A stretch of DNA of 64,000 nt from Saccostrea echinata (lineage: Eukaryota): NCBI RefSeq assembly GCF_033153115.1, contig NW_026889750.1:42780001-42844000 (forward strand), read 5' to 3'. Positions 19,881-64,000 of this stretch are shown here, piece by piece; positions within the stretch are counted from its first letter, which is position 1, and every line of letters starts with the position of its first letter. The translations under genes were made by a program, and so were the position numbers. The notes beneath the pieces were generated by a model. The model saw only the letters and a program-made list of their open reading frames with translations, was not told the DNA's origin and made no database searches.

Positions 19881-22800
19881 GTATCCAGTACGTGTAAATG
19901 GAAACCTCAGGTGGTGAACTGATTCCAACATACTTATTGATGGAAGTTGACTGTTGCAATGTGTTTGAGTAAAACTCTATATAGAAATACATATATAAGT
20001 AATATGTCGGAATTTTTCGCTTTATGGAAAGAAACGATGGGATATTAACATGTCAAAATACCCAAGGATATAAACTGCATTCACACGGCCAGTTCTACTC
20101 GGTCGAATATAAATTGACCTCGATCTGTATATGCTGTAAGCTAAATATAGCTCCAATGCTACCATTTAACAAATGTAGTCACAGTATGCACTCTGTAGTG
20201 CTATATCATAAAAGTATTCCCCATTCTGTAAATGATGTACGAAGAACAAGATTTGATAGTGTATAACAAAATAACGTATTAACCAGATACATAATAAATG
20301 TTTATAAGTCGTAAATATGTGGCTTGCGCAGTGTTGTAAGCTCAGGCATGTTGCTAAGGGTAAAGGACAAACTGTTGGGGATAAGCCTGTTAATTAATAC
20401 AACGTGGCCATTTACTTGCCCCTCTAGGCGTTCACATCAGAATTAATATATAGTTAAAAGGCTTTTGCTTGTAACTACGCGGGAAATTAACAAGAGGCCT
20501 GTTATGCTCACCTGAGTCAATCTGAAAAGAATGTTACCAAGTCCTGGCCGAGGATCAGGAAGCAGTTTTAGACTTAAGTCAAAATTTCACTCATTCATAA
20601 AACATGTTAAAAGAAAATATTAACAACATGAAAGGAAATCAATTCTTGATAACATTTAAAATTTTATGCGTTTGCTATAATAAACTATTATGACAAATGA
20701 ATGTACAAAATCTGACTTCAGTCTAAAAATGCTTGATTATTCTGGCCCCGAGATCATGAAACATCTTAAGCTTAAGTCAAAATCTTTATGTTGTATTAAA
20801 ATGTTGTAGATGTCAAGCAGACTAAAATTGGAATATTCTTCAACATTGCTTCACAAAAGTCTTATTATCTGCAAATTTAGGTAATTTCTATTAATCATTA
20901 AGCACCTAATCCCATCTCCGTTTTCAGAGATCTGTGTAGGCTCTGCTGTTTAAACGGACTTTTGAGAATGACCCTTGTTTGTTATCTTCACATTTCATAT
21001 TTTGACTGGATCTTTTTAACCGTATTGATGGATATGCGGTAATGCTGTAATAATTTTTGGAGAGCTTTAGTCAGAACCCACGGTATCAAAGTCATCGCCT
21101 TTTGCATTATATCTCAAATACATTGATCTTCAAACAAGGCTCAATCAATGAAGTATTATCCCCTAGTCCTTCCTGTTTTGAAATTAAACTAGTGTATTGA
21201 GACAGCGGTGATTTCTTTTGTTTGAGGGATCGACGAATTAAAGAAATCAATTTCTAATAAGAAATAGAAATGAATATACTTTTCCACTTAAATTTGAGTT
21301 TTATGTCCATTCATGGTTAAGTGGTTGCTAAGAAAATGTGTTTCACGTCAATTTAGGACGACACACTCGGCTGGTAACTCTTAAATTTCGTAAATTGATC
21401 TTGAATTTACATTTTGACATTTATTCCATTTAATCCCACCAGCATATCATTTAAGGGTGCTACTGAATTCTTCCCCTATATTGAATTAGGTATAGTTTGT
21501 CATTAAAGAGGAATGATATTGTTGCTTAGGCCAAAGCAATTCCTACGAAAGTAATATTATATGTAAATGTTTAACTTTTTAAGGAGAAGGAAAATTCAAA
21601 GTGTGACAGACTAAATAAAATGGCCGCCACTGTAGAAATGGATCTCATTGTTCTTGGTTTTCCGTTTTTTGACATCAGTAATGTAATGTCTTTAGCACAT
21701 GTTCGGGTCACATTCGGACGGATGATCTCTGGAAATCTCCCTCGTTCGCTTGACGGGGATAACAACATTATAGGATTCAAAGATTACATATATTTTGATA
21801 GAACTTTGAAAAAAATCTACCATTAAGGTATCTTTCAAGGCGTCTGTATCCAATCTGACTAAAAATGGTTAAGGTGTTTTAAATTTGTTTTTAATGTTTC
21901 TTTCAATATAAAAATTTGTTATCTTCAAAATGGAAGCGTTATATATATCAAAGAACCAAAGGTTCGATAAAAAGAGAAAGAATAGGACAGAAGATAAGAA
22001 TACCAATGTGTCCTTTCTCTTCGTACAAGATCGGCAGTTACATGAAATTTTGGAAAATTTAACATAGAAAAAGGAAAAATAATAAAGAATCAAACAACGG
22101 AAAAATGTGCGTACAATCTATTCGTCATGTAGAGAAATTGTTAATTATAAAAGCATTGTGTTTTCTGACTAGAATATATTTTTCTCTCTCTGTCTCATTC
22201 TCACTCACTATAAACACTCCAAAAACTAACCTTTTTTTTTTTCTTTCCATGTATTGAGAGAAATACTCTTTAATATCCTAATATTTTGAATCTTAAATCA
22301 AGGATGACTTATCCAAGTTTAATTGAAAAGGGTTCAGTAGTTTAAGAAATGATGAAAAACTGCAGATGTAGATATGCTGAAAAACAGAGGAGCAGACAGG
22401 TGCCCGATGTATTCCCTTTACCAATAAGTCGATTGGTCCTCTGATCCAGGCGAGCTAATATATTGTAGTGATGGTGAAAAAGAATTATTCTTCCCTATGT
22501 CCGCCACATAAAATACTGAACCACTAACAAAAATGTCGATACTTACAAAACTGTAGTGTTTAATTAAATGTACTTAATTAATACACATAGAATGCTGATA
22601 GGACGTAAGAACAAGAACGAGAGACAAGCCTCAAGGTCAATTATGAAACGTCAATTGGAGGAGGAAGCAAAATGTTAAAAAAAAAAATACAGTAGAGGGT
22701 TTGCATCGATTAAAAATGTCAACACAAGAATATGAAAGCTAGAGGAAAGTCATTAGAGTATTGTGAACAATACATATATTTTAGAGTCTCTGTGCGGGGT

Positions 22801-29033: not shown

Positions 29034-29077
<44 letters not shown>

Positions 29078-29119: not shown

Positions 29120-29503
29120 TATATGAGTTAAGCTGTCATAATTGAATAATTTAATTTTGATTGTAACACGCCATTTGATTGGATAGAAAAATTCGTTTAT
29201 ATCGTATAACCTTGCCTACGTCAAAATGACTGACGTCAAAAACGTATCAATCCGCTTGAAGTTACATTTAAAATCTGAAGAACTTGAAGGCCTTTTTGAA
29301 GGGAAAATTGTCTTATTTTTTCATTTTATAATAGAAAATTAAATTATAAGGAATAGATTTAATAGCTACCTAAGTTATACTTGTATAACCTGGGTTGGAA
29401 CAGTTTATGCTTTTTTATAAACCGCTTCGCGGTATATAAAGCGTAAACTGCCCCAACCCACTTTATACCGTATAAATTGGGTAGCTATTAAATTCATTCC
29501 TTA
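29120..29503 (+). mobile_element. Terminal-hairpin element (Crypton-like non-autonomous)
   Basis: ~157-bp hairpin 29347-29503 with apex CGCTTCGCG. Second copy at 44626-44960 and a partial copy at 28724-28817. Confidence 0.6.
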
Positions 29504-30158: not shown

Positions 30159-33100
30159 ATGAAGACAGTCAGTGAGTACTTGGAGAACGTGCTGGAAGAG
30201 ACGGGTGGCTTTGGGAAGTTCCAGATCCTTCTTCATGGCAGCATTCTCTTCAGTAAGGTGTCCATTACTTGGAGTCTCCTCATCATGGCGTTCGCTGGGG
30301 CTTCTCCTGACTGGTGGTGTGTCTACTCCAACACAACTGATGTCCCTTCTACCATTAACTACAGTATCATAGCGAACACCACTATGACGTCACCAGTCCA
30401 TGACGTGATTCAAGCATATAAAACATGTACACCATCGTCAAACGCCTCTGTCTGTCAGGCATTCATCTTTGATGATAGCATGAAAACAATCATTAACGAG
30501 GTTATACTATGTCTAAATATGTGTTATTTTTCATATTTTTATGTAATTAGAGACATGAAGCCCATAAGCCTTAGCCATCACCCGAGTCACACTCCTCTTT
30601 CTGATATGTGAATATGCAATTGCTCCTTTACAGTGTTTTTGTTTTCTTGATTTTGAAAACAAAACAAAAATAAACAAAGAAAATAAATTACATGTATGTC
30701 GTCCTCGTCCGTGTCCATTTGTTTGGTATTATATATCTACTTTTGTCGCCTGAAACAAAAACATCTCTGTTGCTAAAATGCAAGTTTCATATTCTCAAGA
30801 ATATTGACAGGGGATACTTACTCCTCCATGGCACCTGATCCCACCTCTGTTTTCAGAGTTCAGTGTTGACTCTGCTTACAACCTGTATTGTTTAAATAGA
30901 CTTGATCACTGTTCGTTATTTTTACAATTCATTCACTGTAATTTAATATATGGAAGCATTATTCTTTAAGAAGCAGTTCCCAAAAAGTACTTTTATTATA
31001 AGGCCCGTAATGATTGGAAGAATGGCTGTCTTGGCTGTTTACAAAACTGCTGCAGCAGTTGAATGATAAATCAGGTCTCATTATTATCGGTAAATAATGC
31101 TTTTGCTTTCCTTCAAATCGTAAAAGCTTTTTTGTCCCCAGCGTTTACTGAAAGTGGTGGATATTTAGTTGGGTTTGCCCGTCCGCCTTTCTGTCTGCCA
31201 TTCTGTGTATGTGGAACAATTTCGTTTCCGGACGATATCTTAAAACGCCTTTGAAATTTTGCAGTGTAATTTTATATCACAACTCCCTATATGGCCTCAG
31301 AACAACTCCTATTAGTTTTTAGGTCAAAAAGTCAAGGTCATAAATTCTCTGTGTAACACTTTCATTTCCGGACGATATCTTAAAAAGCTTTTGAGCTTTC
31401 ACAACGAAATTTTATATCACACTTCTTAATGCCCGATGAAGTCCCCTAATGATCTCAAGTTAAAAGTCAAAAATCAAGGTTGGAAATTCAAATATTGCAA
31501 ATAACATTTTCCAGACAATAATTTTAGTTTTATTTGAAAGTCTTTCAATGAAAATTTGTCACAACTCTCTATGGGCTACATAAGACCCCGATTGATTTTG
31601 TGGTCAAAAGGTAAATGTCATTCATTTTGTCTGTATGTAACATTTATGTTTCTGGACGATATTTTAAAAATCCTTTGAGCGTTTACTATGAAATTTAAAA
31701 TTACAACTCCTTATAGCCTTAAAAAGATCCCTATTGATTTTGAGTCAATAGGGCAAAGGTCATGTCAGAAATTCATACATTGCAAATAACATTTTCCAGA
31801 TGAAAACTTTAGTTTTCTTTGATTTTTTTCAATAAAATTTGATATAACTCCCTATGGATTAGAAAAGACCACTACTGATTATGACGTCGGAAAGTCAAGG
31901 TCAGATATTCATTCAATGCAATGGTTTCCAGATGATAGCTTTGGTTTTTCCTGAGCCTTTTCAATGATATCTTATATCATAATTATAAAACTTTATATCA
32001 TAACTCCCAATGACTTAGATTTTTTATTTTTAGGTCTAAAGGTCAAGGTGATAAATTTATATCTTGCAATAATTGGTTTCCTGGTGATAATTCAACTTTT
32101 TTTTAGGTTTTGCATTAGGTTTACCTTTATTCAATATGACTTAAAAAAAGACACTTATTGATTTTGAGTTCAAAAGGTCAAAGACCAGGTGAGAAATTTA
32201 TATATAGCATACTAATTTAAAGGTGACAGGTTAGTTCCCAAAACTCCAAAGAACTTTTAGAAAACTTTTCGAAAGTCATTAACATCAAACGTACGTCTTT
32301 TCTAGACTTTAAGCAACCTTTCCTTGTCATAAATTAAAAAGTAGGCTTTTAGTATCATAGGAAACTGGTTCTTCAATAAAAATGGAACTCGGAAATTTTC
32401 ATATCCTGTGATTGGTCATCAACAAAATTACATTGTTAAATATCACTCCGATTCTACATACAATACTCCGAAGTTTAAATTAAATCTGGAGTTCCTCATT
32501 GACAACATTTATATAGGCGTTGGAGACCAGGTCTTCCAATGGACCTAATTATACTCCTTTTTCAGCCGACCTATTTTTATATCCCTATGAATCAGAAAAC
32601 TTCTACATGAGAAGAAGAAAACACTTGCTCAACAACACGACATTCAGTTATCTTGATCAAGTTTTATCAATTAACAAAAATTACTTCCATTCATATGTCG
32701 ACTCGATATACTTGCATATCCCAGTGAACTAGAAATAAAAGACACCACAAAGTCTGCCACATCTGTTGCATATTTGAATGTTTTACTGACTAAAGACGAT
32801 AAGGGCCAAATAACAACTAAATTGTATGACAAACGAGATGACATCAGTTTTTCCTTTGTCAACTTTCCCTATCTGTATTTATGTTGTAATATTCCGTTAT
32901 CACCTGCACATGGGGTTTAACTCCCCCTACTTATACGATACTCAAGAACATGCTCTGAGTACGATTAATTTTTAAACCGAGGCAGGCTACTGACCGATAA
33001 GTTGATGTTTCAGGGATTTCAAAAACCTCGTTTAAAGTCAGCATTTCGTAAATTCTACGGTCGTAATAATGAATTGTTAGTAAATATGACCTAAATGTAT

Positions 33101-36100
33101 TATTGGGTCGTATTTTGACTGACGATTTTTATACCAATTGTTAGGCCTTTGTTTTTATATTTTTAATTTGACTTGCGAATATTCCGTTTAACTGATCAGT
33201 ACTTCACGGCGGAAGTGACCGGTCGACAGAAGATTTCTACTCCTTCTAGGCACTTGATCCCACCTTTAGAATTTCCGGGGGTCCGTGTTTTTATGCCCTG
33301 TTCAAAGATTTGAATTGTTTGTAGATTTATTTTAGATCGATCACTGTTTCTTATCTTCGACTTTTTCATTCTTTGTAAGCTTTTACAATGATACTTGAAG
33401 TCATGAATTTCTTTAAATTAAAAAGACCCGTATTGCCTTTAAGGCCAAAAGCTGAAAGGTCAAGGTTGATCTTTTTTTTACTCCATCTGCATTTTTTGGT
33501 TCTTCCACCCTCTTCTTTTTCCCTGATTCTCTGAATCTTGTCTTTTGCTTCAAGTCAAGTCACCAAATTTTAATAAATCTAACGATACTTGTCAATTTTT
33601 ACAGAGACCAGGGTTTCAACAAAGCAGATGAAGATGAGGATATTTGTTGGCTGATCTATATTTAATTGACAAACTGTCCATGATAAGTCACCAAAAACAA
33701 AATGCCTCAGACGACTAGTATTTTTGCAATTCCATTAATGTTTTGTTCTTTGCCGACATATGAAATTTTTGTTTTTTTTTTCAATAACACCATGCTTAAA
33801 TATTTTTCAGTGGGGATTGATCTGTGACAAAAAATGGGTGACAGCAACAGTTTCTTCGGTACAAATGGCGGGTCTTCTCATTTCCGGTTTTCTGGGTGGA
33901 CAGCTGGCGGATCTGCTGGGCCGGAAACCAACATTCTTCGTGTCTCTTTTCATTCTATCCGCCTCTAATATTGTGGCTGGATTTTCCCAGTCCTGGGTGA
34001 TGTTCGCTGTGACCCGTTTTATTATCGGGCTGGGGTGCGGGGCGTACCTCACCGTATTCTATACATTCTCTGTCGAGTTCACACCAACTAAATTTCGTCC
34101 TATTCAATTAGCCGTCCCTGATTGGTCAATCTGGGCTGCCTTGTTGGGACTTTGCTCCTATTTGTTGAAGGACTGGAGAAGTCTTCATATTCTGACTGGA
34201 GTTTTGACAGGAATTAGTCTCTTTTCTTGGTGGTATGTCTTTTATATAGAGAGCACATGGTTAAAAGCTTACATGTATTTCAAAATGAAAAAAAAAATAT
34301 TGAAAACTTGTGATGAAAGCATCACTTATTTTTAATAGGATTGTTCCTGAGAGTTTCCGATGGTTAGTATCACATGACAAATTGACTGAAGCTGACAGAG
34401 TCATCAAGAAAATTGCTCGCATAAACAATCATCCCAAACCCGAGCTTAATAAACTCCAAAACGTTGTAGAATCAGATGCTACGTTTCAAGGAGACAGGAA
34501 ATATACATTTTTAGAGCTATTTCGCAATCGAACACTGCTGATCAACACTGCATTAGCTGGTGTTGCCTGGTAATATTTTTCTCTACCCTTTTAAGGGAAA
34601 TTTTCACTGGTAATATTTTTTCTGCTTTTTTTCTTTTGGGGTAAAAATAGTGGATGCAATGTTGCTTAGCAACGTTATGGGCGTAATCAATGTTGCTTTG
34701 CAACCTGATGGCTTTTATTATCATTTGCTACCCTTTCATGATTTTTTTTTAATATAAAAGATAAGAATAACACTAAATTTATATTTAGGAACCTTACAGT
34801 ATTGTCGAATATTGATCAATTGTAAACAGATGACAGTCACGTATTTAATATATAATCTTTCAGGTTCTCCAGCGGTTATGCCTACTACGCTATTTCCTAT
34901 AGCGTGGACCAACTCTCAGGAAATCTTTACCTCAACATGTTTCTCCTTAGTGTCATCGACATTCCCGCTCTTATGAGCATTTGGTACCTCAGTAACCGGT
35001 ACGTATTCAGTAACCGATAAATACCCCAGTAACCGGTAAGTGTTCAGTGTTAAATAAGTATACCCCAGTAACCGGTTAGTATTCAGTAACCGTTAAGTTC
35101 CTCATTAAGCGTCAAGTATTCAATAATCAATAAGTACTTCATTGACCGGTAAGTATTCAGTAAATGACCGGTAAGTACTCAGTAACCAGTATCAGTAATT
35201 GGTAAGTATTCAGTAACTAGTACCTCAGTAACTGTTAAGTATTTAGTAACCAGTACCTTTGTAACCGATAAGTTAACTGTAACCCATAAGTACCTCAGTA
35301 ACCGGTAAGTATTCAGTAACCGATAAGTTTCTCAGTAACTGGTAATTAGAGTCGCTGGTAAGTACCTCAATAACTGGTAAGTATTCAGTAACTAATAAAT
35401 ACTTCTTTTACTGGTAAGTACCTCAATATATAATGAATTTACAAAAATACTCTCGTAATCGGCGATTACCTTAGTAACCAACAATAAATGACTGGTAAGT
35501 ATTCTGGCATTAGGCATTTAGCACTTCAATAACTAGCAAGTACTTGACCTTTCGTTACCGAAAAGTACCACAGAACCAATGAGCAGCTAGTTAGTCACCA
35601 TTAATCATCCCTTTTCCTGGCATATAAGGATTTTCTTTTGTTTGTACCCTTTTTTAGTTTGCTTTTAATATGTAGCATAAGTGATTCAATTCTACCCTTT
35701 TGATTCTGCAAAGGACAAGGTATGGTACGGCCGAATTTAGCCCCATACTGGAACTAAAAATCAAAACATAGTTAAAATTGATAGTTTGCAGTTAAAGGTG
35801 CTTAGACACAGATTTGAAGTTAATATTTAATCAAATTTTCTGTATAATTTCATGACTTATATGTTGTTTTAGCATTTCATACGAAAATTTGATAAAAATA
35901 TTATTTTATCCGGAAATTAATGAAATTTCGAATTTCTGGACGCGTTTGATCAACACATCCTTGCACTTTCACAAATTTTAACTTTATCCTTATTACTTTA
36001 GAAAAGTAGCAATTTTGTTGTTTATTAATGAAAAATATTAAAACTATAATGCAGAAATTTCAGAGTAAAAATGTAGAAAGCAAAATCCTCTCACCAGTAT

Positions 36101-39100: not shown

Positions 39101-42100
39101 TGGGGAGAGGGGTGGGGCTACCTCCACGCCAAAGTCATCCTAGTACAGATGATTAATTCACATCATATGATACCCCCCCCCCCCCCTCCCACGCGTATTG
39201 CATGGTCGTTCCGGCCTCAGAACCACTCGTCAGCACTTAAGTTTTCGATAGGTCTTTTATATGTAATTTTCAAATCGGTAGGACGGGGGTTGTTGTTCAG
39301 GGATTTCATTGTTATGACATCGACATAGTAATTTAGGCTACTAATGACTCAAAAGCTTTTCCAGAATCTAGCTGCCATTGCATTTTAACTGGACTATTTA
39401 AGCTGGTCTATACATCCAATGCCATGCATGCGATCATTCTGGAAAACTGTAAAATCACCGAAACTGAGATTATGAAGTTAGTTTGAACTCTGTGAATATT
39501 GACGGAGTTGTAATCTTCCCAACACCCCACCCCTCCCCCTTCCAAAAAAAAAAAAATTAAAAATTATAAACTCAAAAATAATATTTTTAACATCCAAACA
39601 ACTAATATGATATTTCACTAAAAATTCTTCAATTTCAATTAAATTATACCTCATGCAGTATAAATTCATCTATAAGAAATCATATTAAAATACATGTATT
39701 TACTAGTATTTATATATTTTTTGCAATAATACATATAATCATGTAACTTGTAAGCCAGTAAACACATTCCAGAGGGGTATACAGGATTTCAAGATGGGGG
39801 GGGGGGGGTGTTTGTTTGATTATTGTTTAACGTCCTTCTCGAGAATTTTTCACTCAGATTGAGACGCCACCACTTGCCGGTGGAGAGCTGCAAATTTTTT
39901 ACCTATACTCGGCACTCAGGGCCATTGAGCAGCGAGGGATCTTTTTCGTGCCAACACCTACTGCGACACGGGGCCTCGGTTTATACGGTCTCATCCGAAG
40001 GACCGGTCTCCACGTCCCACAGTGGGATTCGAACCCGCGACGTAAGGACCAACTCCTTACTTCGCGATTCTAGAGCAGACGCTCTAACCACTGCGCCACG
40101 TGGGCGACGGGGGGGGGGGGGGGGGGGGGTGATATTAATGACAAAATGACAACATAAACTCAAAATACTACTAGTAAAAATGAGTATATAGGAGCAAAGA
40201 TTTTCTCAAGATTCAGGTTTTCTCTATTGAATATCAAGAACATAAATGTTTTCTAAAACTTTTCTTTCTTTCAACCTCTTACTTTTTTTTCTTCATTTTT
40301 TTTTTAAAGACGTACATATACCACATATATATAAGTGTGGTACGTCTTTTTTAAACGTGGGTTTTCTTGACTGAAAGTGTTAGAATCTAAGTGTATTTAA
40401 AGTAGATTCAAAATTTTTTATTAACAACCCGAAAGATAAGCCATCATGATTACACATACATATTTTGAGATACAACGTTAGTTTTCCTTGAAATGATGAA
40501 TGTGAACAACAATCAAAATGTCAATATCCACTTGAACCTTTAAAATCCGACCAAAGAGACCTTATTAGCTGAGAAAAGGCGTGCATACGTCGAACAACCT
40601 GCAATAATCATTTTAATAAAAACTTAATATTCTCACACATTCTGTTAAAACATGCGTTTTGGACGATTTTCGTATCACGATCCCGATGTTTTACCTATTT
40701 TTAAAACACCATATAGTGAAGTATCATCATATAATGTTAAAGTATCAGCATATAATGTTGAAGTATCAGCATATAATGTTAAAGTATCAGCATATAATGT
40801 TGAAGTATCAGCATATAATGACAAACTATCCGCATATAATGTTGAAGTATTAGCATATAATGTCTCAGCATATAATGACAAAGTATCAACATATAATGAC
40901 AAACTATCAGCATATAATGTTAAAGTATCAGCATATAATGTTAAAGTATCAGCATATAATGTTGAAGTAACAGCATATAATGACAAACTATCAGCATATA
41001 ATGACAAACTATCAGCATATAATGTTAAAGTATCAGCATATAATGAATGTTCTCCACATAAGGCAGCTGAGGCGTTCCATAATGAACACTTCAACATTTT
41101 CTGGCTATGACACGCGGAGTTGCAGATTTGATCGGTTCTTGGTGAAAATTCTTGCTTAATTTATCATTCTTCATCATTTGAGTTGTATGAGGGGTTTCTT
41201 TGCATAATTTTGCAGAAAATACTGTAATAGACTTTCACCCCAAATAAACGGCAAAACCTTCAATATTATTGTGTGCAACCCGGCGGTTGACTTTTAGTGG
41301 AGGTAGGGGGCAAGGAATCATTTTTCATTCTATCTTGTTTGTAGGAATCTGCTGTGTTTAGAATGCATATGTAAAAGAAATAAATTCAAATGAGACTACT
41401 AACTCGCACAAGATGAAACAGGCCTTTATTTTTATACTGATTTTGACTACGGAAAGTTCCGTCCACCAGATCAATACATAGGGCTCACGGCGGGTGTGAC
41501 CGGTCAACGGGGGATGCTTACTCCTCCTAGGCACCTGATCCCACCTCTGGAATTTTATCAAAAGGTAATTAAACTATCTTGGCATAAGTAGCATGAGCAT
41601 GCATTTCCCTCTGTCACGTACAACATAAAACATAACACAAAACGTAAAACTTATTTTGAGTAAATATGGCGAATTCGAACCAAAAATATATGTACTAGTA
41701 TTTTTAAGACTCTACACAACAAAATTATGCATTTCATGGGCTCTCTTTACAGAAAAAGTATTTTATATCTTGCGTATCTACCTCGCTGTATTTTTTTTTT
41801 ACTTTAATAAAAGCTTCTCCACAAGTCGCCCGCGCGGTTGGAGCGTTCGCTATAGAGTAGCTGAGTAAGGAGTTCATTCTTTCGTAGGGGGTTCGAATTC
41901 CAGTGCGGGATGTGACCCATCCTTCGCGTATAAACCGAGGTCCCATGTTGCAGTAGGTGCTGGTACGAAAAAGATCCCTCACTGTTCAAAGGCCCAAGTG
42001 CCAAGTACAGATCTAAATTTCTCGAAGGGACGTTAAACAAATAAAGTTAACAAATCTTCTCCACAAAAGTTTATAACAAGTGACATATTTGAAACGCTTC

Positions 42101-45100: not shown

Positions 45101-48048
45101 CTAGCACTACTACTAAACTACCAAACACTAAATATTTACAATGTTACATGTTTAATTTGGAGTTTATAAACAGTTGTGAACAAAGAAAACCGGTGTATCC
45201 GGTTAGCAGGGGTTGCTCACTCCTCCATGACACTTGATCCCACCTCTGAGGTTTTTGGAGGTCCGTGTTTGCTCTGCTCCCGATTTGTATTGTTGTATCC
45301 TGAAGAACACCTCGGCCAGAGTTATTAAGTATCTCCATACAGTGTAGATTCAGTTTGTTCACATCAGAAGCTAGAATGAAGTCATGATTGGAATTAAAAT
45401 TTTATTTGGGAATTCAAGTGTATTGGAATAAAAATTCTTAAGTTTAAAACTCGTCTTTTTAAGATCAGCAAGACCACAATAGGTCATATTGTAATTATAA
45501 TACTTTGTCAAATCATGGGCCTTGGGCTATATAGGGAATCAGAATTTTGCATTGGAAACATAAAGGGAAAAAATCTATAAATAGTCTTTTCTGAAGAAAA
45601 ATGGGGCATAGTAGTAAAATTAATCATCTTCATGTAATAAAGATGAGACTGTTCAAATCGTGACCTTGGGGTCAAAAAAAGAGTAATACTATCTAAAGGT
45701 TATCTTCGCCCCTTGCTATTGCCCTATCACACTTGCAAACGATTTTGCCCCAGAACCACACCCCCGCCTTCCCAAAAAAAAACATGCCCTTCACAAAAAG
45801 GAGTAATATTATATAAGGGTTATTTTCGCCCCGTGTTATTATCGCCCTATCACACTTGCAAATGATTTTGCCCCATACACCGTCATGTTAAAGAGGCAAC
45901 TCTGTCTTCTTTGAATTTGCCCCGTTTTAAATTCGTCCACTTTGGAGAAAGGGGCGAAAATAAAATGGGGGTGAATTTTTACCTGTTTACAATATGCATG
46001 TATATATGTATAGAAACATCTTGGTCTTCTCACAAAGTCAGAGTCGCATTTAGTCATATTTAATATATGCAAACATCCAATGCAACGTGGATTCATATAA
46101 GGGCAACCATTGGGAACATCTGTAAGAAAAAGAGGGCTACTATTTCCTTGAGGTGATATATAGCCTTTATAGTTAACTTTATTTGGAATCGTAGACTTTA
46201 ATTTTGAGAAGAGTAAGAGGTTTCATTTTTTCTTGAAATCACAGACTTTAATTTGGAGACGACAGTAAGAGGTTTCATTTATCTACGTGTACTTATTCAA
46301 TAGACCTTTGTCAGGAAGAGAATGGGGAATCAGGTAAGCCTTATGAACCACGGGCCTCTTGTTTAACTCAAGGTGGTTCTGTTAAAAGTATAAACAATTA
46401 ACTTTCCTTGATTTGTTTCAAAAATAAGGATACCGCAAAGTGGAATATCCCCTCGCAATAGAGCACATCTTCAAGAGGCTTGTTACGTACAACACTCTAA
46501 GCACTCGCATCAAAACAAAAGCAAATGGATGTTTGTAAAAGGCAGTATCATACCACAGGTACTTGTGGACAGGACCCCCCCCCCCCAATATTCAACCCAG
46601 AGGCTTGTTGGACATTTTTTTTCACAAATTATATTTATTACACTTATTTATCATGTGTACCATAGGTAAAAATCGTGAAAACCCCAAAATAATCGTTCCA
46701 CACAAAACTACCCTCACTATACATTATAAGAGATCCTTATAATGTATAATGGGGGTATTTTTGTGTAGAACGATTATTTTTAGGTTTTCACGAAAACAAG
46801 CCTCTGGGTTGAATATCGGGGGGGGGGGGGGGGGGGGTTCCTGTCCACAAGTACCTGTGTGTCATACAAAGTTCCTGTCATTTTTTTATGTTTAACTGCC
46901 ATTGTTTATGTTTAACTGCCATTGACTCCTGATTCATTCTACAATAGAACAGAGCTAAGTTATAATTATGGAGCACCAACATATAGATCTGTACAATTAA
47001 TTATCATTACAGCAATCACAAAACGCGTCTTATTGACAAGAATACATTTTAATTTAAAAAAAATAGAAAAGAAAAAACCATATACATTAGGGGGCATTTT
47101 TATTTTATAGATAGATCAAATATGATTTCAGTATCGTATTTTTAACGCTGCATTTTACGATCAAATCTCAAAATGTAGGTAAAATTGTATCAAAAACTTG
47201 GTCTTTATTCTCAGTTTAATGTGTAGCTCAAGTTTGCTCAATGCCACAACTACAACAGCTAGGAGTCACATGATTCAAAGACTGTGTTTTTTTCTAGATG
47301 TGGACAAAGAACTGCAGAAAAGTCTGATAAACGGATTCGCTCTGGCGGCCAAACTTGGCGTCTCTGCATCCTGGGCCGCCATCATGGCCTTCACAACGGA
47401 AGTTTATCCCACTGTCGTCAGGTAAGTAGATTCAGGTCCGGAAGTATAATTACTAGTATCCCACTTGTCGTCAAATAAAAAGATTCAGATGCGGAAGTTT
47501 ATCCCCTTGTCCGCGGATCAAACAGAAAAAATACTCTATTTTAGCAAAATGGATATAGTGTTCTCATCTTATATAACTCCTGTAGGGGTATATCTTTACA
47601 TTTTTAATTCAGTTTATTCAGTACTTTAACATTTACTGTAGGCCCTTCAGTAGTTCCCGAGTTTTCGTTCGACAAATTCACTTGTGATTTTTTTTCTATA
47701 TAAAATCTTATGATTTTTACTTTAAAAAACAGAAACATTGGTTATGGAACTCAGAATTCCATTTCACGGATAGGAGCGCTTATTGCACCCCAGTTTGTTC
47801 TGCTGGTAAGTATTCGTGGAAATTATCCGATGTAGATAGAATTTTGTGGTGCACTATGAATTTACCTACAATTCTTTATTTTTTTTTATTTCCAGAACAA
47901 AGAAACTCCTGGGGTTATGTATATCATCTGTTTTGTTGTTTCCTTAATCTCAGCTATCATGTGCCTTTTGCTGAAGGAAACCAAAGATAAAACAATTGGG
48001 GACAATTTGGAAGTTTCAGTAAAGCAGAGGTCCGGAAGTCGTGTGTAG
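30159..48048 (+). CDS. SLC22-family organic cation/anion transporter, paralog 2; 8 coding exons, 520 aa
   Basis: Exons 30159-30500, 33811-34232, 34339-34569, 34864-34998, 37161-37243, 47298-47421, 47733-47805, 47896-48048. Exon lengths are identical to paralog 1 (342/422/231/135/83/124/73/153). The frame is intact to the TAG stop. Confidence 0.93.
31128..32220 (+). repeat. Helentron/HINE-like element with ~140-bp tandem array (about 7 units)
   Basis: TTTCCRGAYGATA...AAGGTCAAGGTCA units at about 31225, 31365, 31508, 31649, 31793, 31925 and 32077. T-run start with a short hairpin and GTCC/GTCT microsatellite. A remnant resumes at 33370-33470. Confidence 0.65.
32230..33369 (+). mobile_element. 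Highly decayed Naiad copy (RT 3' half plus 3' UTR) in intron 1 of paralog 2
   Basis: Recognisable similarity to 50810-51976 (aaactccaaagaacttttagaaaa; ttgtatgacaaacgagatgac; gtgaccggtcgac...ttttcat). Confidence 0.8.
34985..35570 (+). repeat. Homologous donor-junction minisatellite (paralog 2)
   Basis: Same unit, longer array. Confidence 0.85.
35796..36566. mobile_element. Kolobok-like foldback MITE (TTAA TSD)
   Basis: TTAA|AGGTGCWTAGACACAGATTTGAAGTT at both ends; inverted arms of about 370 bp. Confidence 0.8.
37291..37560 (+). mobile_element. HINE/Helentron 5' end with satellite remnant
   Basis: ttttagctctccagagccaaaggctcaagtaagct..., the typical TTTTAGCTCACCTGAGC start. A matching 3' end (caggtaagc...gggcctcttgttt) lies at about 46331-46363. 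Confidence 0.6.
37640..37845 (+). mobile_element. Internal Naiad RT fragment
   Basis: Matches 51215-51425 (YIDD region to EIKDTTESDISVSY). Confidence 0.8.
38057..41081. mobile_element. Non-autonomous IS3EU-like DNA transposon A with array-built TIRs of about 500 and 420 bp
   Basis: Ends TATGGAACGCC...GGCGTTCCATA. TSD ATGAAC at 38051-38056 and 41082-41087. Inverted arms 38057-38563 and 40665-41081 contain 21-bp arrays. Confidence 0.85.
39811..40108 (-). mobile_element. tRNA-derived SINE, full length (central domain probably Meta/MESC type), nested in element A
   Basis: A box TGGCGCAGTGG and B box GGTTCGAATCCC; body TGGCACGAAAAAGATCCCTC; (AAAC)n tail; flanked on both sides by G-runs. Confidence 0.85.
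41825..42055 (+). mobile_element. tRNA-derived SINE of the same family, internally deleted
   Basis: Same head (GTCGCCCGCG..., B box GGTTCGAATTCC) and body. 11-bp TSD CTTCTCCACAA at 41814-41824 and 42056-42066. Confidence 0.85.
42378..43632. mobile_element. Non-autonomous IS3EU-like DNA transposon B with array-built TIRs
   Basis: Ends TATGGCATGTCAAACGTTGCA...TGCAACGTTTGACATGCCATA. TSD AACTGG at 42372-42377 and 43633-43638. Arms 42378-42804 and 43311-43632 carry 21-bp TTGTATAATTTTYCATTTGTA arrays. Confidence 0.85.
43172..43246 (+). mobile_element. SINE/LINE 3' tail fragment with (CAAG)n tail, inside element B
   Basis: catggctgaaatattgccgactcagtgttaaacaataatcaagcaagcaagc resembles mollusc SINE tails; recognised from memory only. 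Confidence 0.55.
43742..44029. mobile_element. Mariner-like MITE
   Basis: Inverted AAGGTTGTCCCAMAATTYCGTAGAC; the right end is CCTTCG|TA. Confidence 0.55.
44491..44624. other. Assembly gap
   Basis: N run. Confidence 1.
44626..44960 (+). mobile_element. Second copy of the terminal-hairpin element
   Basis: Aligns to 29174-29503; hairpin 44805-44960. Confidence 0.6.
45008..45048 (-). ncRNA. Minimal type I hammerhead ribozyme motif (Penelope-like element pLTR type)
   Basis: Minus strand reads TTGTC-CTGAGGA-A-GGGAC-AGGTT-GTCCC-GAA-AATT-T-GACAA: stem I, CUGANGA core, stem II, GAAA, and a palindromic 4-nt stem III. Confidence 0.72.
46554..46859. mobile_element. Foldback MITE with 8-bp TSD (P- or hAT-like)
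   Basis: TIR CACAGGTACTTGTGGACAGGA-(C)n-ATATTCAACCCAGAGGCTTGTT; TSD TATCATAC/TGTCATAC; palindromic interior. Confidence 0.8.
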
Positions 48049-49601: not shown

Positions 49602-51976
49602 GGGTTAGGTCAACAGTTAGGTCTACATCATATTCGCACCAAACTTTACTCTTTCCCTTTGAAACTTTTAAATAGTCTTCTTGAAAAGGTCAAGGAAAGT
49701 CCATTTTTTGATTCCTCGACACCAGAATATAGGCTCGGATCTGTAGTTATGGATATTGCCAATCATAGGCTTTTTAAACCCCCGCGTTTTACTGAAGAAA
49801 ATGCAGCTAAAACAATCCGTTTTTTCCTTAAACTTCAATATGCCAACAAAGGAATTGACGCGGTTAATATAAGTAATATTCTTAATCACAAAAGGGTCCA
49901 GTCTTGTATTCCACCATATTTCAACTTAAAGATTACACCTTGTATTTCCTACAAATATACATCGACTATTGCTTCCAAACTTTTTAATTACAAGAAAACT
50001 TTACAGGGCCTGGATATCGAATATCTGAAACATAATCCTCCATCGTGTTCATGTTCTTCTTCGCCCTATAACTATAGTCCTGCTGGACACGTTATTACTG
50101 GTGACGTAAATATAGTTAATAATGAGGACCTTAGATCACTAATTTTAAAAGGTCCTAAATTTAGGGAACCTAGATCCTTCAACTGGCGTAAGAATTTCAT
50201 AAATATTATGGATTCTGTAGAGGACTACGCCAGGCGATGGGCCAGACATGAAAAAGAAGACCTTGACACTTTGTCAGAATGGATTAAATGTATCAGATGT
50301 ATGTTAAAATCGCGCATTAAAAGATTGAGAGGCAATATGAAAACCATCTATCCTTCTGTATTCAATAATCCAGAAGTGAAAAAAGAATTAGATAGATTAC
50401 ATGATCAGTACGTACTGGTCCCTGCTGACAAAGCAGGTAACAACATTGTTTGTAAGGCTCATTATATTAGATGTATTTTAGAGGAACTTGGATTTAATTC
50501 TACAAGTGGTAATCCAACTTATACTCATAGTTCCCTTTCTAAGGAAGAAATTCATCAAAATCATATGTCAGTTTTGGATGTTTTTAATATTCCAAACAAC
50601 CAAAATGAATTCCAATTACCATATTTATATTGGATTCCGAAACTTCATAAAAATCCTTACAAACAAAGATACATAGCGGGTTCCAGTAAATGTTCAACCA
50701 AGCCTCTATCTTTACTGCTCACTAAGATATTAACAGTGGTGAAGGAGAAACTTCAAGAGTACTGTGCAACAATATATTCGAGAAGTGGTGTAAATCAGAT
50801 GTGGATACTTAAAAATTCCAAGGAACTTTTGGAAAATTTGAAATCACAAGATTTTACCAAAATCAACAGCTTAAAAACTTACGACTTTTCAACTTTATAC
50901 ACAACCATTCCCCAAGATAAATTAAAGTCCAGGCTTTTTGATATCATTGACAGCTGCTTTTTCAATAAAAATGGAACTCGTAAATATACTTACCTTGTTA
51001 TTGGTCATTTGCAAAATTATTTTGTTAAAAAACATTCTGATTGTACACACAAGTACTCTGAAGTTGACATTAAAAAGATGCTTGAGTTTCTGATTGACAA
51101 TATCTATGTGGTTTTTGGAGACCAGGTCTTCCTACAATCTATTGGAATTTCTATGGGTACCAATTGCGCCCCGTTATTAGCAGACCTTTTTTGTATTCAT
51201 ATGAAGCAGAATTTGTCCAAAATCTTGTACATGAAAAGAAGAAAACACTTGCTGTGGCGTTCAACTCGACATTTAGATATATCGACGACGTATTGTCAAT
51301 TAACAATGGCTATTTTCATTCTTATGTCGATACGATATATCCTGGTGAACTTGAGATAAAAGATACCACAGAGTCTGACATATCTGTTTCATATTTGGAT
51401 ATTTTACTTGAAAAAGACGTTAATGGTAATCTAACAACCAAGCTTTATGATAAACGTGATGACTTTAACTTTTCAATCGTCAACTTCCCTTACTTATGCA
51501 GCAATATACCTTCATCACCTGCATACGGGGTATATATCTCTCAGTTGATTCGATACGCAAGAGCATGCCCTACGTATGTACAATTTCTAAAACGAGGTAA
51601 ATTATTGACAAATAAGTTGATGAAACAAGAATATCAGCTGTCTCGTTTAAAGTCATCATTTCGTAAGTTCTATGGTCGATACAATGACCTTGTCAGCAAA
51701 TACAATTTATCATTGAGTCAAATGCTGACTGACGTTTTTCATACTAATTGTTAGGCCATTATTTACACACTGAATTGTCGACGGATTTTTCCGTTACTTC
51801 CCGATCATGACAAGGAGCACACGGCGGGTGTGACCGGTCGGCAGGGGATGCTCACTCCTCCATGGCACCTGATCCCACCTCTGATGTTTGGAGGTCCGTG
51901 TTTGCTCTGCTCCTATTTTGTATTGTATAATGGACTTTTGAGCTTGAATACTGTATGTTATCTCCATATATTTCAT
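49602..51976 (+). mobile_element. Naiad-type Penelope-like retroelement, 5'-truncated, reverse transcriptase (RT) almost intact
   Basis: ORFs 49659-51359 and 51164-51754 join across one frameshift in a T-run at about 51190. CxC linker (PSCSC...GHVITGD); PLE RT motifs PADK, IPKLHK, DFSTLYTTIP, GISMGT, RYIDD, YLDI; no C-terminal GIY-YIG; 3' UTR ends TTTCAT. CATGGG is present at both junctions (49599-49604, 51974-51979). Confidence 0.88.
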
Positions 51977-52159
51977 GGGACTATTTAAGATTTAAAAAAA
52001 AATAATTTTCTTAAGAACCACAATAAAACCACCTTTACACAAATTTGATATTCCTTATGCAAATTGCTTAAGAAATATCCAAATTTTTGCAAAGAGAGAA
52101 TCATCAATTTGCAAACATTACCAAGTTATTTGCATTTTTTTTTTTAATTATTGACTCCA

Positions 52160-52815
52160 GGTTAGGTGCAGATCTTTAACTCGCTGGTCTGAAAAAAAAA
52201 AGGGATGGACGACCAGAGAGCTACAGTGCCACTCATTGAAAAAGTGCGCTGTTTCTCGATTTATTTCTCCGTATATTTCAAAATATTACCAACTTTGTGT
52301 TCCTACCATATTCTTTTACTTCTTCCACGACAAAACTGCATGACAAGTCATGTACCAAGTGCGTTGGACCGAATTATCTTGCCGTCCAAAATGGCAGTAT
52401 AAATAGGCGAAATTTTCGATGGTCTCAATTTCAGGCCCAGGAGGGCTATCATGTTGTAAATTTTGAATTTACTAGGGGGAGGTAAATGCAAAATTTACAA
52501 CATGATAACAGTTATCAAGTTGTAAATTTTGCATTTACCTCCCCCTAGTAAATTCAAAATTTACAACATGATAGGGCTATTATTGACGGTTTTGGAGAAT
52601 GTTTTGTTGTGGCAGTAGTTAAAGAATAGTTCAGAAACACACGGTTAGTAATATTTTGAGACGGCAGCGTAAATATTCGGAGAAATAAATCGAGAAACAG
52701 CGCACTTTTTTGTGCGCAGTGAATATACTCTTTTTTCAATGGGTGGCACTGTAGCTCTCTGGTGTGGTCCGTCCTTTTTTTTTCAGACCAGCGAGCTACA
52801 GATCTGCAGCTAACC
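52160..52815. mobile_element. MITE with ~120-bp TIRs and apparent 3-bp TSD (Harbinger-like)
   Basis: GGTTAGSTGCAGATCT...AGATCTGCAGCTAACC; CCA on both sides; contains a central palindrome at 52446-52574. Confidence 0.7.
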
Positions 52816-63771: not shown

Positions 63772-64000
63772 CTTCAGAAGGTCAATATTAACATCAATTG
63801 TCTCTCCTCAAAAAAGAAGAAATGTATATGATTTCATGCATCCAGCTCATTAACTAACTGTATAACATCCTGCTTAACATTCAAATTGATGAAAATTCTG
63901 CATATGGAAAAATCTTTTACAAAATAGTTTATTTCGTGATATTAAGCAAAATGTTCTTCTGACAATCACTGAAAATTCTGCTTATTGTTTACATAGTCAC

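What the first reader, a model, noticed from the sequence alone, without database searches (positions are those of the whole stretch)
51781..51913. Conserved structured RNA-like module at the Naiad 3' end, 8 copies in 64 kb, pseudoknot-capable
Seen: downstream of the RT stop lies a GC-rich block that folds by eye into a three-way junction. Closing stem GAGCA-CACGG (51815-24) pairs with CCGTG-tt-TGCTC (51896-907); CGGGTGT (51825-31) with GCACCTG (51865-71); ACCTCTGA (51877-84) with TTGGAGGT (51888-95). The inner AGGGG/CTCCT hairpin competes with a GGGAT (51845-49)/ATCCC (51872-76) pairing that would form a pseudoknot. An ACGGA/TCCGT hairpin precedes it. Other full or partial copies: about 7518-7650, 14560-14595 (-), 20900-20947, 30806-30876, 33176-33300, 41449-41551 and 45190-45282; five have no ORF attached. 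The last hairpin keeps its pairing despite sequence change (CTCTG-tttt-CAGAG at 30845; ATCTC..GAGAT at 20914; CCAGGGGT in the minus copy), and some copies show GGGC or GCCC in place of GAGC/GCTC. Known: N-terminal-endonuclease PLEs were described as lacking canonical hammerheads, and PLE RTs are sister to telomerase RT. Inference: a cis-acting RNA, either an RT-recruitment/priming element or an unrecognised self-cleaving ribozyme. The nested topology loosely recalls HDV-like folds, but I see no P1.1 GG pair or catalytic C.
Basis: partly seen in the sequence, partly recalled or inferred. Interest (0 to 1): 0.78.

Follow-up and report, generated by a model that had tools for sequence, protein, structure and literature searches.

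The report
Conserved RNA junction in Naiad retrotransposon tails
The 3' untranslated tail of an abundant mollusc retrotransposon (Naiad-type Penelope-like element) carries a conserved 93-base, probably three-armed RNA fold, most likely the handle by which the element's own reverse transcriptase recognises its RNA.

Summary
At 51815-51907 (+), 60 nt after the RT stop and about 69 nt before the element's 3' end, lies a 93-nt GC-rich block. A covariance model finds it 7 times on the + strand of the window; an eighth, partial copy lies on the - strand. First-look counts in the 923-Mb genome run to thousands.

The copies without an ORF are ordinary 5'-truncated insertions of several related Naiad families.

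Two of the five proposed helices, the outer closing stem and the last hairpin, carry compensatory changes between families. They also do so in six metagenome contigs from another organism. The inner helices and the proposed pseudoknot never vary, so they remain untested.

The 64-nt core is more conserved than the RT coding sequence next to it (89-92% against 73-76%).

Rfam 15 has no match, and folding energies are not unusual. Three oligo-dT RNA-seq runs cover the block but show no pile-up of read ends, so nothing supports self-cleavage.

Best reading (about 0.5): a cis-acting RNA recognised by the element's RT/endonuclease protein. It would be a new variant of a known kind of element. Function is inferred, not shown.

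The scan noted the same motif elsewhere in this genome (s1-803405).

The parts
49605..51754 (+). 5'-truncated copy of Naiad family 'A': RT reading frame in two pieces (49659-51359 and 51164-51754, shifted frames), ending with stop TAG at 51752-54.
   Evidence: ORF list. tblastn of P0009 matches aa 229-781 at 49605-51278 and aa 741-912 at 51155-51679; nothing matches aa 1-228. Pfam finds no family in either ORF. 11,731 homologues at E<=0.001.
51781..51794 (+). Small hairpin P0 (ACGGA / TCCGT, loop TTTT) between the stop codon and the junction.
   Evidence: The sequence is kept in families A, B and D and in metagenome copy L139. It shows no covariation and is not in the RNAalifold consensus.
51815..51907 (+). 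93-nt core, modelled as a three-way junction. P1a 51815-18/51904-07; P1b 51820-24/51896-900; P2 51825-30/51866-71; P2b 51843-47/51855-59; junction ATCCC 51872-76; P3 51877-84/51888-95.
   Evidence: Folds. Pair counts on 23 sequences: 93.1% of cells paired, P1a compensatory in 3 of 4 pairs, P3 in 2 of 8 pairs. Models R1 and R2.
51908..51976 (+). 3' tail of the element, ending ...ATATTTCAT. Unique flank begins after it.
   Evidence: Alignment of 30 genomic copies: all but L027 share the sequence up to this motif and then diverge. The terminal GTTCGTTAT... motif is shared by families A, B, D and E and by metagenome copies. RNA-seq depth is 0 in the flank 52002-52165.
7516..7656 (+). Second full module (family A1) behind decayed RT remnants at 5342-7379.
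   Evidence: R1 138.7 bits; R2 hit at 7551-7646, 90 bits; tblastn.
33171..33303 (+). Module of family B (GGGC/GCCC type, decayed) behind RT remnants at 32541-33064.
41446..41555 (+). Family B copy that starts near the stop codon (5'-truncated) and is cut off at 41555, inside the last hairpin.
   Evidence: Matches to 39 other genomic copies stop at query position 109-113, while those copies themselves run on into the tail. R2 covers model positions 11-83 only.
45150..45284 (+). Family A2 copy, 5'-truncated inside the junction (similarity begins about 45192).
30797..30935 (+). Family D copy, 5'-truncated at P2b, with tail.
20869..21000 (+). Family E copy, 5'-truncated; last hairpin ATCTC..GAGAT; with tail.
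   Evidence: R2 scores it only at E=0.24.
14495..14625 (-). 'F' copy: decayed RT C-terminal coding joined directly to the 3' half of the last hairpin, the 3' strands of P1, and the tail. The P2 domain is absent.
   Evidence: The same architecture is in L131 on another contig. Not reported by R1 or R2 at E up to 1.

Best explanation
The block is a cis-acting RNA element in the 3' UTR of Naiad-type Penelope-like retrotransposons. In the sense transcript, a closing stem (P1a/P1b) encloses about 85 nt that carry a nearly invariant inner domain and a variable-sequence hairpin (P3).

I propose that the element's own RT/GIY-YIG protein binds this fold. Binding would pick out the element's RNA and fix where reverse transcription starts, about 69 nt downstream at the conserved ...GTTCGTTAT...TTTCAT terminus. 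Every insertion that is not 3'-truncated therefore carries the fold, including heavily 5'-truncated ones.

Shown:
- its position in the element;
- its abundance;
- conservation above the coding level;
- compensatory changes in P1a and P3;
- its presence in RNA-seq data.

Inferred:
- binding by the protein;
- a role in template choice and initiation;
- the fold of the inner domain.
For: 1. Element identity. The ORF upstream has 11,731 homologues. Full-length ones carry an N-terminal GIY-YIG domain: P0009 residues 86-169, 32.9 bits against a cut-off of 22.6. A full-length family-A copy elsewhere in the genome has GIY-YIG at the matching place: L141, 23.6 bits against 22.6.

2. Fixed place. In families A, B, D and E, and in foreign copies, the order is stop codon, spacer with P0, junction, then a tail of about 70 nt to the shared terminus.

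3. Structure. On 23 sequences, 93.1% of 638 cells pair, against 38-50% when partners are slid. 20 cells in 6 pairs have changes on both sides (0 of 500 shuffles reach 20 cells; 33 of 500 reach 6 pairs). The covariation score is 0.183 against 0.141 +/- 0.007. P1a reads GAGC/GCUC, GGGC/GCCC, UGGC/GUCA, UGGC/GCCA and UGAC/GUCA at homologous offsets. Among 132 distinct genomic copies, P1a pair 2 is A-U in 64, G-C in 49 and G-U in 7. RNAalifold finds the same junction, with 5 compensatory pairs among 29. G-U pairs in P2 and P2b are kept (19 and 22 of 23), so only the sense strand can fold this way.

4. Constraint. For family A against family B copies with full coding sequence, the 64-nt core is 89-92% identical and the last 301 nt of coding 73-76% (Fisher p = 0.004 and 0.002; segment table). 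Against four foreign copies, leaving out the 20-mer used to find them, the core is 86%, 82%, 77% and 64% identical and the coding sequence 57-64%.

5. Another organism. The 5.9-kb contig L139 matches this genome only in short pieces at 70-85%. L136:1000-1400 matches at 67-83%.

6. Precedent. In a canonical PLE, reverse transcription starts inside a stem-loop of the RNA. A protein-binding motif lies close by, and the hammerhead is dispensable in vitro (PMC11167929, main text read).
Against: - No binding or retrotransposition data exist.
- P1b, P2 and P2b show almost no informative variation. Single-sequence folds give at least three different inner folds. A nested alternative (GGGA/UCCC plus UGCUUA/UAGGCA) pairs in 95.7% and 79.7% of cells.
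- Folding-energy z-scores are ordinary in 5 of 6 cores.
- All sequences are fairly close relatives (84% mean column identity), so the compensatory changes amount by my own count to about 5-6 independent events. The shuffle control is known to be generous for related sequences.
- The foreign copies were found with a 20-mer from the core, which biases them toward conservation. One of the four (L136) shows no excess once the 20-mer is removed.
- The 'F' lineage lacks the whole P2 domain yet sits at two dispersed loci. The domain may therefore not be strictly required for copying.
- No non-autonomous family sharing only the module was found.
Confidence: 0.5

Rival explanations
1. A new self-cleaving ribozyme that replaces the hammerhead of canonical PLEs and cuts multi-copy transcripts into units.
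For: It sits where canonical PLEs carry their hammerhead, in the 3' region / pseudo-LTR (Craig et al. 2021, passages). Naiads lack canonical hammerheads. The core has invariant unpaired bases and conserved G-U pairs. A pseudoknot pairing GGGAU/AUCCC is possible and conserved.
Against: There is no match to any Rfam 15 ribozyme family at gathering score, or at E up to 10 on A, A2, B and D copies. The junction strands are 0/5/0 nt, unlike a hammerhead core. CUGAUG occurs only in family A and is absent in B, D and the foreign copies. Three oligo-dT RNA-seq runs show no place where many molecules begin or end (table 6). This is weak evidence, since reads came from many families and the libraries are unstranded.
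Confidence: 0.08
2. A DNA-level signal: a promoter or transcription-start region that works when the 3' part lies upstream of a tandem copy as a pseudo-LTR, or a site recognised by the GIY-YIG endonuclease for insertion into existing copies.
For: In Penelope and Chlamys-3 the pseudo-LTR holds the transcription start (Craig et al. 2021, passages). The Penelope endonuclease recognises element DNA (PMC11167929). Tandem or partial-tandem arrangements occur here: a 5'-truncated copy directly follows a complete 3' end in L103, and there is a second module 255 nt away in L011. Strong primary-sequence conservation fits protein binding to DNA as well.
Against: Compensatory changes in P1a and P3, and conserved G-U pairs that would be A-C on the other strand, point to a folded single strand. 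The window's family-A copy has no module upstream of it.
Confidence: 0.15
3. An RNA element with another job in the transcript: stability, 3'-end formation, export, translation control, or pairing of two RNAs through the palindromic loop words (ACCGGU; CCAUGG in A/D against CCUAGG in B and foreign copies).
For: It lies in the 3' UTR and is present in poly(A)-selected RNA-seq. The AU-to-UA swap keeps a 6-nt palindrome. The PLE protein of Anolis is predicted to act as a dimer (PMC11167929).
Against: Nothing tests any of these roles. The palindrome is broken in some copies (L138 ACCGGA, L139 UCUGGG). The constant distance to the 3' terminus fits a role in reverse transcription better.
Confidence: 0.17
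4. No function of its own: the families are young relatives, or exchanged their 3' ends by template switching, and the GC-rich block merely looks structured.
For: Folding energies are no better than shuffles in 5 of 6 cases. All families compared are close. PLE reverse transcriptases are known to switch templates (general knowledge, not tested here).
Against: The core is more conserved than the adjacent coding sequence in 7 of 8 comparisons. It is conserved in another organism whose other DNA matches at only 70-85%. Helix positions change in a compensatory way.
Confidence: 0.07

Closest known systems
RNA recognition and internal initiation region of the canonical PLE 'PAc' (Poseidon of Anolis carolinensis; Frangieh et al. 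2024, PMC11167929)
   Same: Both belong to Penelope-like elements. In both, a structured RNA region lies close to the end of the inserted unit, and in PAc the RT starts inside a stem-loop with a protein-binding motif nearby. In both the hammerhead is not needed (PAc, in vitro) or not present (Naiad).
   Different: PAc's region lies at the pseudo-LTR/ORF junction, within the first 172 nt of the ORF, and is AC-rich. Here the block lies in the 3' UTR after a C-terminal RT. It is GC-rich, three-armed and has no sequence likeness. Nothing is shown biochemically for Naiads.
3' UTR recognition structures of R2 and 'stringent-type' LINEs (conserved 3' stem-loops bound by the element's RT; recalled knowledge, no call)
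   Same: It is a conserved fold near the 3' end, carried by all 5'-truncated copies and assumed to give template specificity.
   Different: The RT clade differs (PLE/telomerase-like). Here the primary sequence is also strongly conserved. No partner SINE sharing the tail was found.
Hammerhead ribozymes of canonical PLEs (Rfam hammerhead families)
   Same: It occupies the same region of the element and also has a three-helix junction.
   Different: There is no CUGANGA...GAAA core, the junction strands are 0/5/0 nt, there is no Rfam match, and there is no sign of cleavage.
Three-way junction (CR4/5, stem-terminus element) of telomerase RNA bound by TERT (recalled knowledge, no call)
   Same: It is a three-way junction with a short, highly conserved arm. 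The RT involved belongs to the clade that is sister to TERT (Craig et al. 2021 abstract).
   Different: This is only an analogy of shape.

Membership tests
Naiad clade of Penelope-like elements (host element) | GIY-YIG endonuclease N-terminal to the RT | tested here: met
   Met for family A, not for the window's own copy. L141, cut from a full-length family-A copy with a 1046-aa open frame, has GIY-YIG at 23.6 bits against a cut-off of 22.6. Homologue P0009 has GIY-YIG at 86-169 and matches the RT region at 251-767. The window's copy starts at aa 229 of P0009.
Naiad clade of Penelope-like elements (host element) | No canonical hammerhead ribozyme | tested here: met
   Rfam at gathering score gives 0 matches in 64 kb. 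At E up to 10 there is no ribozyme family on the 3' region of A, A2, B or D copies.
Naiad clade of Penelope-like elements (host element) | CxC zinc-finger-like linker; CCHH motif | not tested
   The N-terminal part could not be fetched beyond 360 nt.
Naiad clade of Penelope-like elements (host element) | [quoted passage not shown] | tested here: met
   5'-truncated copies: 45150, 41446, 30797 and 20869 in the window, and L020-L022 and L027. Tandem cases: L011 and L103.
Hammerhead ribozyme | Core CUGANGA ... GAAA ... UH at a three-helix junction | tested here: not met
   There is no Rfam match. The junction strands are 0, 5 (AUCCC) and 0 nt. CUGAUG occurs only in family A, and no GAAA follows.
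HDV-like ribozyme | Nested double pseudoknot with P1.1 and a catalytic C | tested here: not met
   There is no Rfam match even at E up to 10. The one possible pseudoknot (GGGAU/AUCCC) is invariant, so it is untested. The membership feature itself was not found.
SECIS element (known in 3' UTRs of some clam and spider Naiads) | AUGA ... AA ... GA quartet around a helix of about 10-14 bp, close to the stop codon | tested here: not met
   There is no Rfam SECIS match. AUGA at 51808-11 is not kept (family B has CAAUAC). No GA follows the stem in family A.
C/D-box snoRNA | C and D boxes with a terminal stem; score at or above the Rfam gathering score | tested here: not met
   Only sub-threshold matches were found: Afu_264 at 13-20 bits against 40, and SNORD10 at 25.9 against 37.
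tRNA-like / tRNA-derived SINE module | Cloverleaf recognisable to ARAGORN | tested here: not met
   0 genes in 51600-52100.
Retroelement 3' recognition element (works like R2 or stringent LINE 3' UTR) | Conserved fold near the 3' end, kept across related families | tested here: met
Retroelement 3' recognition element (works like R2 or stringent LINE 3' UTR) | Specific binding by the element's RT; needed for reverse transcription | not testable with these tools
   This needs biochemistry or a reporter assay.
Retroelement 3' recognition element (works like R2 or stringent LINE 3' UTR) | Non-autonomous partners share the element | tested here: inconclusive
   Upstream flanks of the 60 family-B-type loci (L031-L090) that I read were RT coding sequence or truncation points. 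Only the best 40 of about 1,900-2,600 candidates per query were scored.

The most novel reading that the evidence does not exclude
Naiad elements, the PLE clade without hammerheads, carry a new catalytic or telomerase-RNA-like RNA. Either the 93-nt junction is a new class of protein-assisted self-cleaving ribozyme, or it is a CR4/5-like three-way junction bound by the TERT-related RT. The second case would make Naiad RNPs a living model of how telomerase acquired its RNA subunit.
Probability: 0.1. Interest if true: 0.85.

Novelty: new variant of a known kind. Interest (0 to 1): 0.5.

Why it matters
Penelope-like elements are the least understood class of eukaryotic retrotransposons. [quoted passage not shown] This genome gave 26,000-38,000 first-look candidates for the protein.

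Nothing is known about how a Naiad protein finds its RNA. A short, defined and conserved RNA with two helices already supported by compensatory changes gives a concrete object for binding, probing and in vitro reverse-transcription assays of the kind now available for one canonical PLE.

If it is the recognition handle, it would also be the part needed to make a Naiad RT copy a chosen RNA. It would further explain why 5'-truncated fragments always keep this block.

Tried and rejected
- Known RNA families. Rfam 15 at gathering score gave 0 matches on the window and on six foreign contigs. At E up to 10 on 51500-52200 and on ten loci, it gave only sub-threshold snoRNA/miRNA-type matches. ARAGORN found nothing.

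- SECIS and K-turn idea. Rejected: AUGA and GA are not conserved.

- Hammerhead core. Rejected.

- More divergent Naiad families in the same genome. I searched with distant homologues P0009, P0073 and P0088. All three returned the same young family A at the top. All 17 of 17 3' regions I then fetched were family A.

- Cross-species DNA through the look-up of encoding contigs.

- Collection scans with a 20-mer of the core. Viral contigs gave 0. Genome contigs gave 1 hit, in a GC-rich bacterial MAG contig with no model match; about one chance hit is expected in 596 Gb, so I set it aside. Metagenome contigs gave 6 useful contigs.

- Alignment problems. MAFFT and model R1 misplace the 3' strand of P1a in family B. 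I solved this by aligning stretches cut exactly from P1a to P1a. Alignment A5 held one locus in the wrong orientation and was discarded.

- Pseudoknot count. It was one column out of register. The right register is contained. Neither shows covariation.

- Literature. The searches were: Naiad + Penelope-like + GIY-YIG; Penelope-like + UTR + secondary structure + retrotransposition + ribozyme; Naiad + Penelope-like + template RNA + target-primed; the 20-mer as text (0 papers); and the contig prefixes (0 papers). None describes this element. Craig et al. 2021 was read as passages only. Its supplementary file S1 (consensus sequences, 'HHR_core' and 'HHR_half_core' marks in 3' UTRs) was not visible and may bear on novelty. 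The 2026 bioRxiv preprint on retrozymes was read as passages only.

- Origin of the metagenome contigs. Not established.
Full report
WHAT IS THERE

The stretch 51781-51913 lies just after the end of a reverse-transcriptase reading frame. That frame runs 49659-51359 and 51164-51754, in two shifted frames, with stop TAG at 51752-54. The minimum-energy fold of the + strand reproduces a three-armed shape.

I number the helices as follows:
- P0: 51781-85 / 51790-94
- P1a: 51815-18 / 51904-07
- P1b: 51820-24 / 51896-900
- P2: 51825-30 / 51866-71
- P2b: 51843-47 / 51855-59
- junction strand AUCCC: 51872-76
- P3: 51877-84 / 51888-95

The energy is not unusual. For 146 nt, z = -0.76, with 40 of 200 shuffles folding at least as well. 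The minus strand gives z = 0.04. Six 92-98-nt cores from different families give z = -0.46, -0.80, -2.74, -0.24, -1.59 and +0.91.

THE HOST ELEMENT

Pfam finds nothing in the two window ORFs. A full HMMER scan of 1.84 billion representatives finds 11,731 homologues at E<=0.001.

Full-length homologues carry a GIY-YIG domain N-terminal to the RT region. P0009 has it at residues 86-169, 32.9 bits against a cut-off of 22.6. P0005 and P0020 fall just below the cut-off.

The window's copy matches P0009 only from residue 229, so it is 5'-truncated. Full-length members of the same family exist elsewhere in the genome, for example one with a 1046-aa frame without stops. A 360-nt piece of that copy encodes GIY-YIG at 23.6 bits against 22.6.

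So the element is a Naiad-type PLE as defined by Craig et al. 2021 (PMC8557442, passages). That paper reports that Naiads lack canonical hammerheads and dominate bivalve genomes. First-look candidate counts for the protein in this 923-Mb genome were 38,052, 31,616 and 26,476. These are lower-bound-type counts, not copy numbers.

COPIES AND FAMILIES

In the window, the repeat finder gives 5 copies. Covariance model R1 gives 7 on the + strand, with E from 9e-41 to 8e-4. An eighth, partial copy lies on the - strand at 14495-14625; it is seen only in alignments.

Searches of the genome with the window copies gave 138, 2313, 1925, 1899, 2599, 322 and 33 first-look candidates, with up to 40 scored in each.

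From these I distinguish several families:
- A: young, 92-100% identical copies
- A1: the copy at 7516
- A2: the copy at 45150
- B: the copies at 33171 and 41446
- D: the copy at 30797
- E: the copy at 20869
- F: a deletion lineage, the copy at 14495 on the - strand

In 29 of 30 family-A loci the shared sequence runs to ...ATATTTCA(T/C) and unique flank follows. In the window the element therefore ends at about 51976, 69 nt after P1a. Families B, D and E have the same layout and a related terminal motif.

The 'copies without ORF' are explained simply:
- 45150, 30797 and 20869 begin inside the block.
- 41446 begins near the stop codon and is also cut at 41555.
- 14495 is the deletion lineage.

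This is the 5' truncation expected of target-primed reverse transcription. I found no separate non-autonomous family. Only the best-scoring copies could be inspected, though.

IS IT A STRUCTURE?

Mutations in dead copies are neutral, so what counts is change between lineages.

- P1a pair 2 is A-U in 64, G-C in 49, G-U in 7 and other in 12.
- P3 pairs 4, 6 and 7 alternate between Watson-Crick and G-U.
- P3 pair 8 is A-U in 56 and G-C in 48.
- P1b, P2 and P2b vary only by scattered single changes.

A scan of public metagenome contigs with a 20-mer of the core returned six contigs, from the OCZB01 and OBLZ01 sets. All six carry the module (R1 E from 2.7e-26 to 0.004; R2). In three of them (L135, L136, L139) it lies behind a decayed Naiad RT C-terminus.

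They come from another organism:
- L136:1000-1400 finds nothing above 83% in this genome.
- The whole 5.9-kb L139 finds only short pieces at 70-85%.

In these copies P1a reads UGGC/GUCA, UGGC/GCCA and UGAC/GUCA, at the same offsets from P1b as in families A and D.

On a structural alignment of 23 cores (A7), the count of structure pairs gives the following:
- 93.1% of 638 cells paired, against 38.1-50.5% with partners slid by 1-3 columns.
- 6 pairs with changes on both sides (33 of 500 shuffles reach this).
- 20 such cells (0 of 500 shuffles reach this).
- Covariation score 0.183 against 0.141 +/- 0.007 (0 of 500).

By helix:
- P1a: 3 of 4 pairs compensatory.
- P3: 2 of 8 compensatory, plus 3 that change on one side only between Watson-Crick and G-U.
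- P2: 1 cell with a double change.
- P1b and P2b: none.

RNAalifold on nine complete 3' UTRs predicts the same junction. It finds no conserved helix in the spacer or the tail, and 5 of its 29 pairs have compensatory changes.

Caveats apply. The sequences are related (84% mean column identity). By my own count the independent compensatory events number only about five or six. The structure was derived from these sequences. The tool itself warns that related sequences can beat all shuffles.

I conclude that P1a and P3 are real helices of the sense strand. The closing of the roughly 85-nt domain is therefore real as well. The fold inside (P2/P2b) is unresolved:
- Single-sequence folds disagree with one another.
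My first count of the pseudoknot was one column out of register.

IS IT CONSTRAINED?

Family A against ten family-B copies, by segment:

| Segment | Identity |
|---|---|
| Last 301 nt of coding | 72% |
| Spacer with P0 | 70% |
| 5' flank | 64% |
| P2-P2b domain | 86% |
| AUCCC junction strand | 96% |
| P3 | 75% |
| Tail | 66% |

For the two B copies with complete coding sequence, the 64-nt core is 89% and 92% identical against 73% and 76% for coding (one-sided Fisher p = 0.004 and 0.002). In two further B copies the coding value is depressed by truncation.

Against the four foreign copies, after leaving out the 20-mer that found them, the core is 86%, 82%, 77% and 64% identical. Coding is 57%, 60%, 62% and 64%, with p = 8e-5, 0.003, 0.04 and 0.6.

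So a non-coding stretch is better kept than the neighbouring coding sequence in 7 of 8 comparisons. The conserved part includes unpaired bases and two G-U pairs (19 and 22 of 23 sequences). That suggests recognition of specific bases rather than of a helix alone.

WHAT IT IS NOT

- It matches no Rfam family.
- It is not a tRNA.
- It is not a hammerhead. The junction strands are 0/5/0 nt, and CUGAUG occurs only in family A.
- It is not a SECIS element of the kind Craig et al. found next to the stop codon of some clam Naiads. AUGA and GA are not conserved.

RNA DATA

Of 24 runs listed, 20 hold at least part of the stretch. Four are recorded as RNA, and three more RNA runs of the same species label are kept as raw reads.

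I laid three oligo-dT raw-read runs and one metatranscriptome on 51100-52300:
- 1230, 811 and 1027 reads were laid, and 1125, 752 and 978 of them fit only in part.
- Depth peaks on the core. In X21 it is about 240 per mate direction at 51838-51878, against 0.3-17 in the bins from 51100 to 51427.
- Depth is 0 in the unique flank 52002-52165.

The peak mainly reflects reads from many families that share the core, not higher abundance. Both mate directions are equal, so the strand cannot be told. The table of places where many molecules begin or end is empty.

This shows that Naiad 3' ends are present in RNA libraries. It gives no sign of a cleavage site. It does not exclude inefficient or protein-dependent cleavage.

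MECHANISM

The only biochemical study of a PLE is Frangieh et al. 2024 (PMC11167929; its main text was read). It found four things:
- The protein needs a defined part of the element's RNA.
- Reverse transcription starts inside a stem-loop rather than at the RNA's 3' end.
- The start site is not homologous to the target.
- The hammerhead is dispensable in vitro.

By analogy, I take the Naiad junction to be the protein's handle on its RNA. The grounds are its constant distance of about 70 nt from the conserved terminus, its presence in every non-3'-truncated copy, and its base-specific conservation. I take the conserved terminal motif to be the start region. This is inference.

Against a strict requirement stands the 'F' lineage. 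It joins the RT C-terminal coding sequence to the 3' half of P3 and lacks the whole P2 domain. It sits at two dispersed, mutually diverged loci: the window copy and L131. The junction point in the decayed window copy is not certain.

NOVELTY

The searches named under Tried and rejected found no description of this element. Rfam 15 has no such family. Craig et al. searched Naiad 3' UTRs only for hammerhead and SECIS motifs, as far as the passages show.

A first-stage note of this scan (s1-803405) records a 93-letter multi-stem motif in four Naiad copies elsewhere in the same genome. That agrees with this report but is not independent evidence.

VERDICT

The element is real and conserved, and part of its structure is supported. 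Its most likely role is a cis-acting recognition RNA of Naiad elements (0.5). It is a new variant of a known kind. The ribozyme reading stays open but unsupported (0.08).

Noticed in passing
window 14495-14625 (-) and L131:1-321: A Naiad deletion lineage in which the RT C-terminal coding sequence runs directly into the 3' half of the last hairpin. The spacer, P0, the 5' strands of P1 and the whole P2 domain are missing. It occurs at two dispersed loci that are strongly diverged from each other.
   Followed up: partly
window 52022-52105: An AT-rich inverted repeat just beyond the element's 3' end. It gives sub-threshold matches to plant miRNA precursor models (best MIR6459, 27.4 bits against a gathering score of 100). 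Probably just a hairpin-forming AT-rich flank.
   Followed up: no
window 56786-63773 (-): Long series of 9-nt-phased GGN-CCN repeats (families D4, D8, D9, D13 and D17). They read as Gly-X-Y collagen-like coding exons on the minus strand.
   Followed up: no
window 7516, 20869, 30797, 33171, 41446, 45150, 51780: Seven of the eight Naiad 3' ends in the window point the same way (+), although they belong to at least five families and were inserted separately. This may be antisense bias inside a minus-strand gene.
   Followed up: no
window 12355-15223 and 30137-35431: Two copies (85-92% identical pieces) of a larger repeat that includes arrays of a 37-nt unit (D5, D10, D11, D14, D15, D18). The changing offsets (17,782, then about 20,300) fit the family-B Naiad copy at about 32.5-33.4 kb being an insertion into the second copy.
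   Followed up: no
window 38008-38614, 40656-41088, 42393-42780, 43330-43610: Four arrays of 20-21-nt tandem repeats (D1, D2, D3, D6). The 3'-truncated family-B copy at 41446-41555 lies between two of them. Note s1-815038 treats this region as transposons with array-type ends.
   Followed up: no
own genome C32:6696735-6699428 (3' region = L105): A family-A copy with 8 in-frame TGA codons plus 1 TAG and 1 TAA. Its 3' UTR is ordinary family A without a SECIS-like change. The TGA codons may be decay products or may echo the selenoprotein Naiads reported in clams.
   Followed up: partly
window 51860-51865 and alignment A7 columns 47-52: The loop word CCAUGG (families A, D, E) is replaced by CCUAGG (family B and two foreign copies). 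This double change keeps a 6-nt palindrome. Together with ACCGGU on the other side of the loop, it might allow RNA-RNA pairing.
   Followed up: partly
L139:786-961, 1250-1581, 4854-5018: The foreign 5.9-kb metagenome contig shares further short repeats with this genome at 70-85% identity, one of them in inverted orientation. These are other mobile elements common to the two organisms.
   Followed up: no
L140:3832-3851 (-): The only genome-contig hit of the 20-mer lies in a GC-rich contig of a Comamonadaceae MAG and has no model match. It is taken as a chance occurrence.
   Followed up: yes
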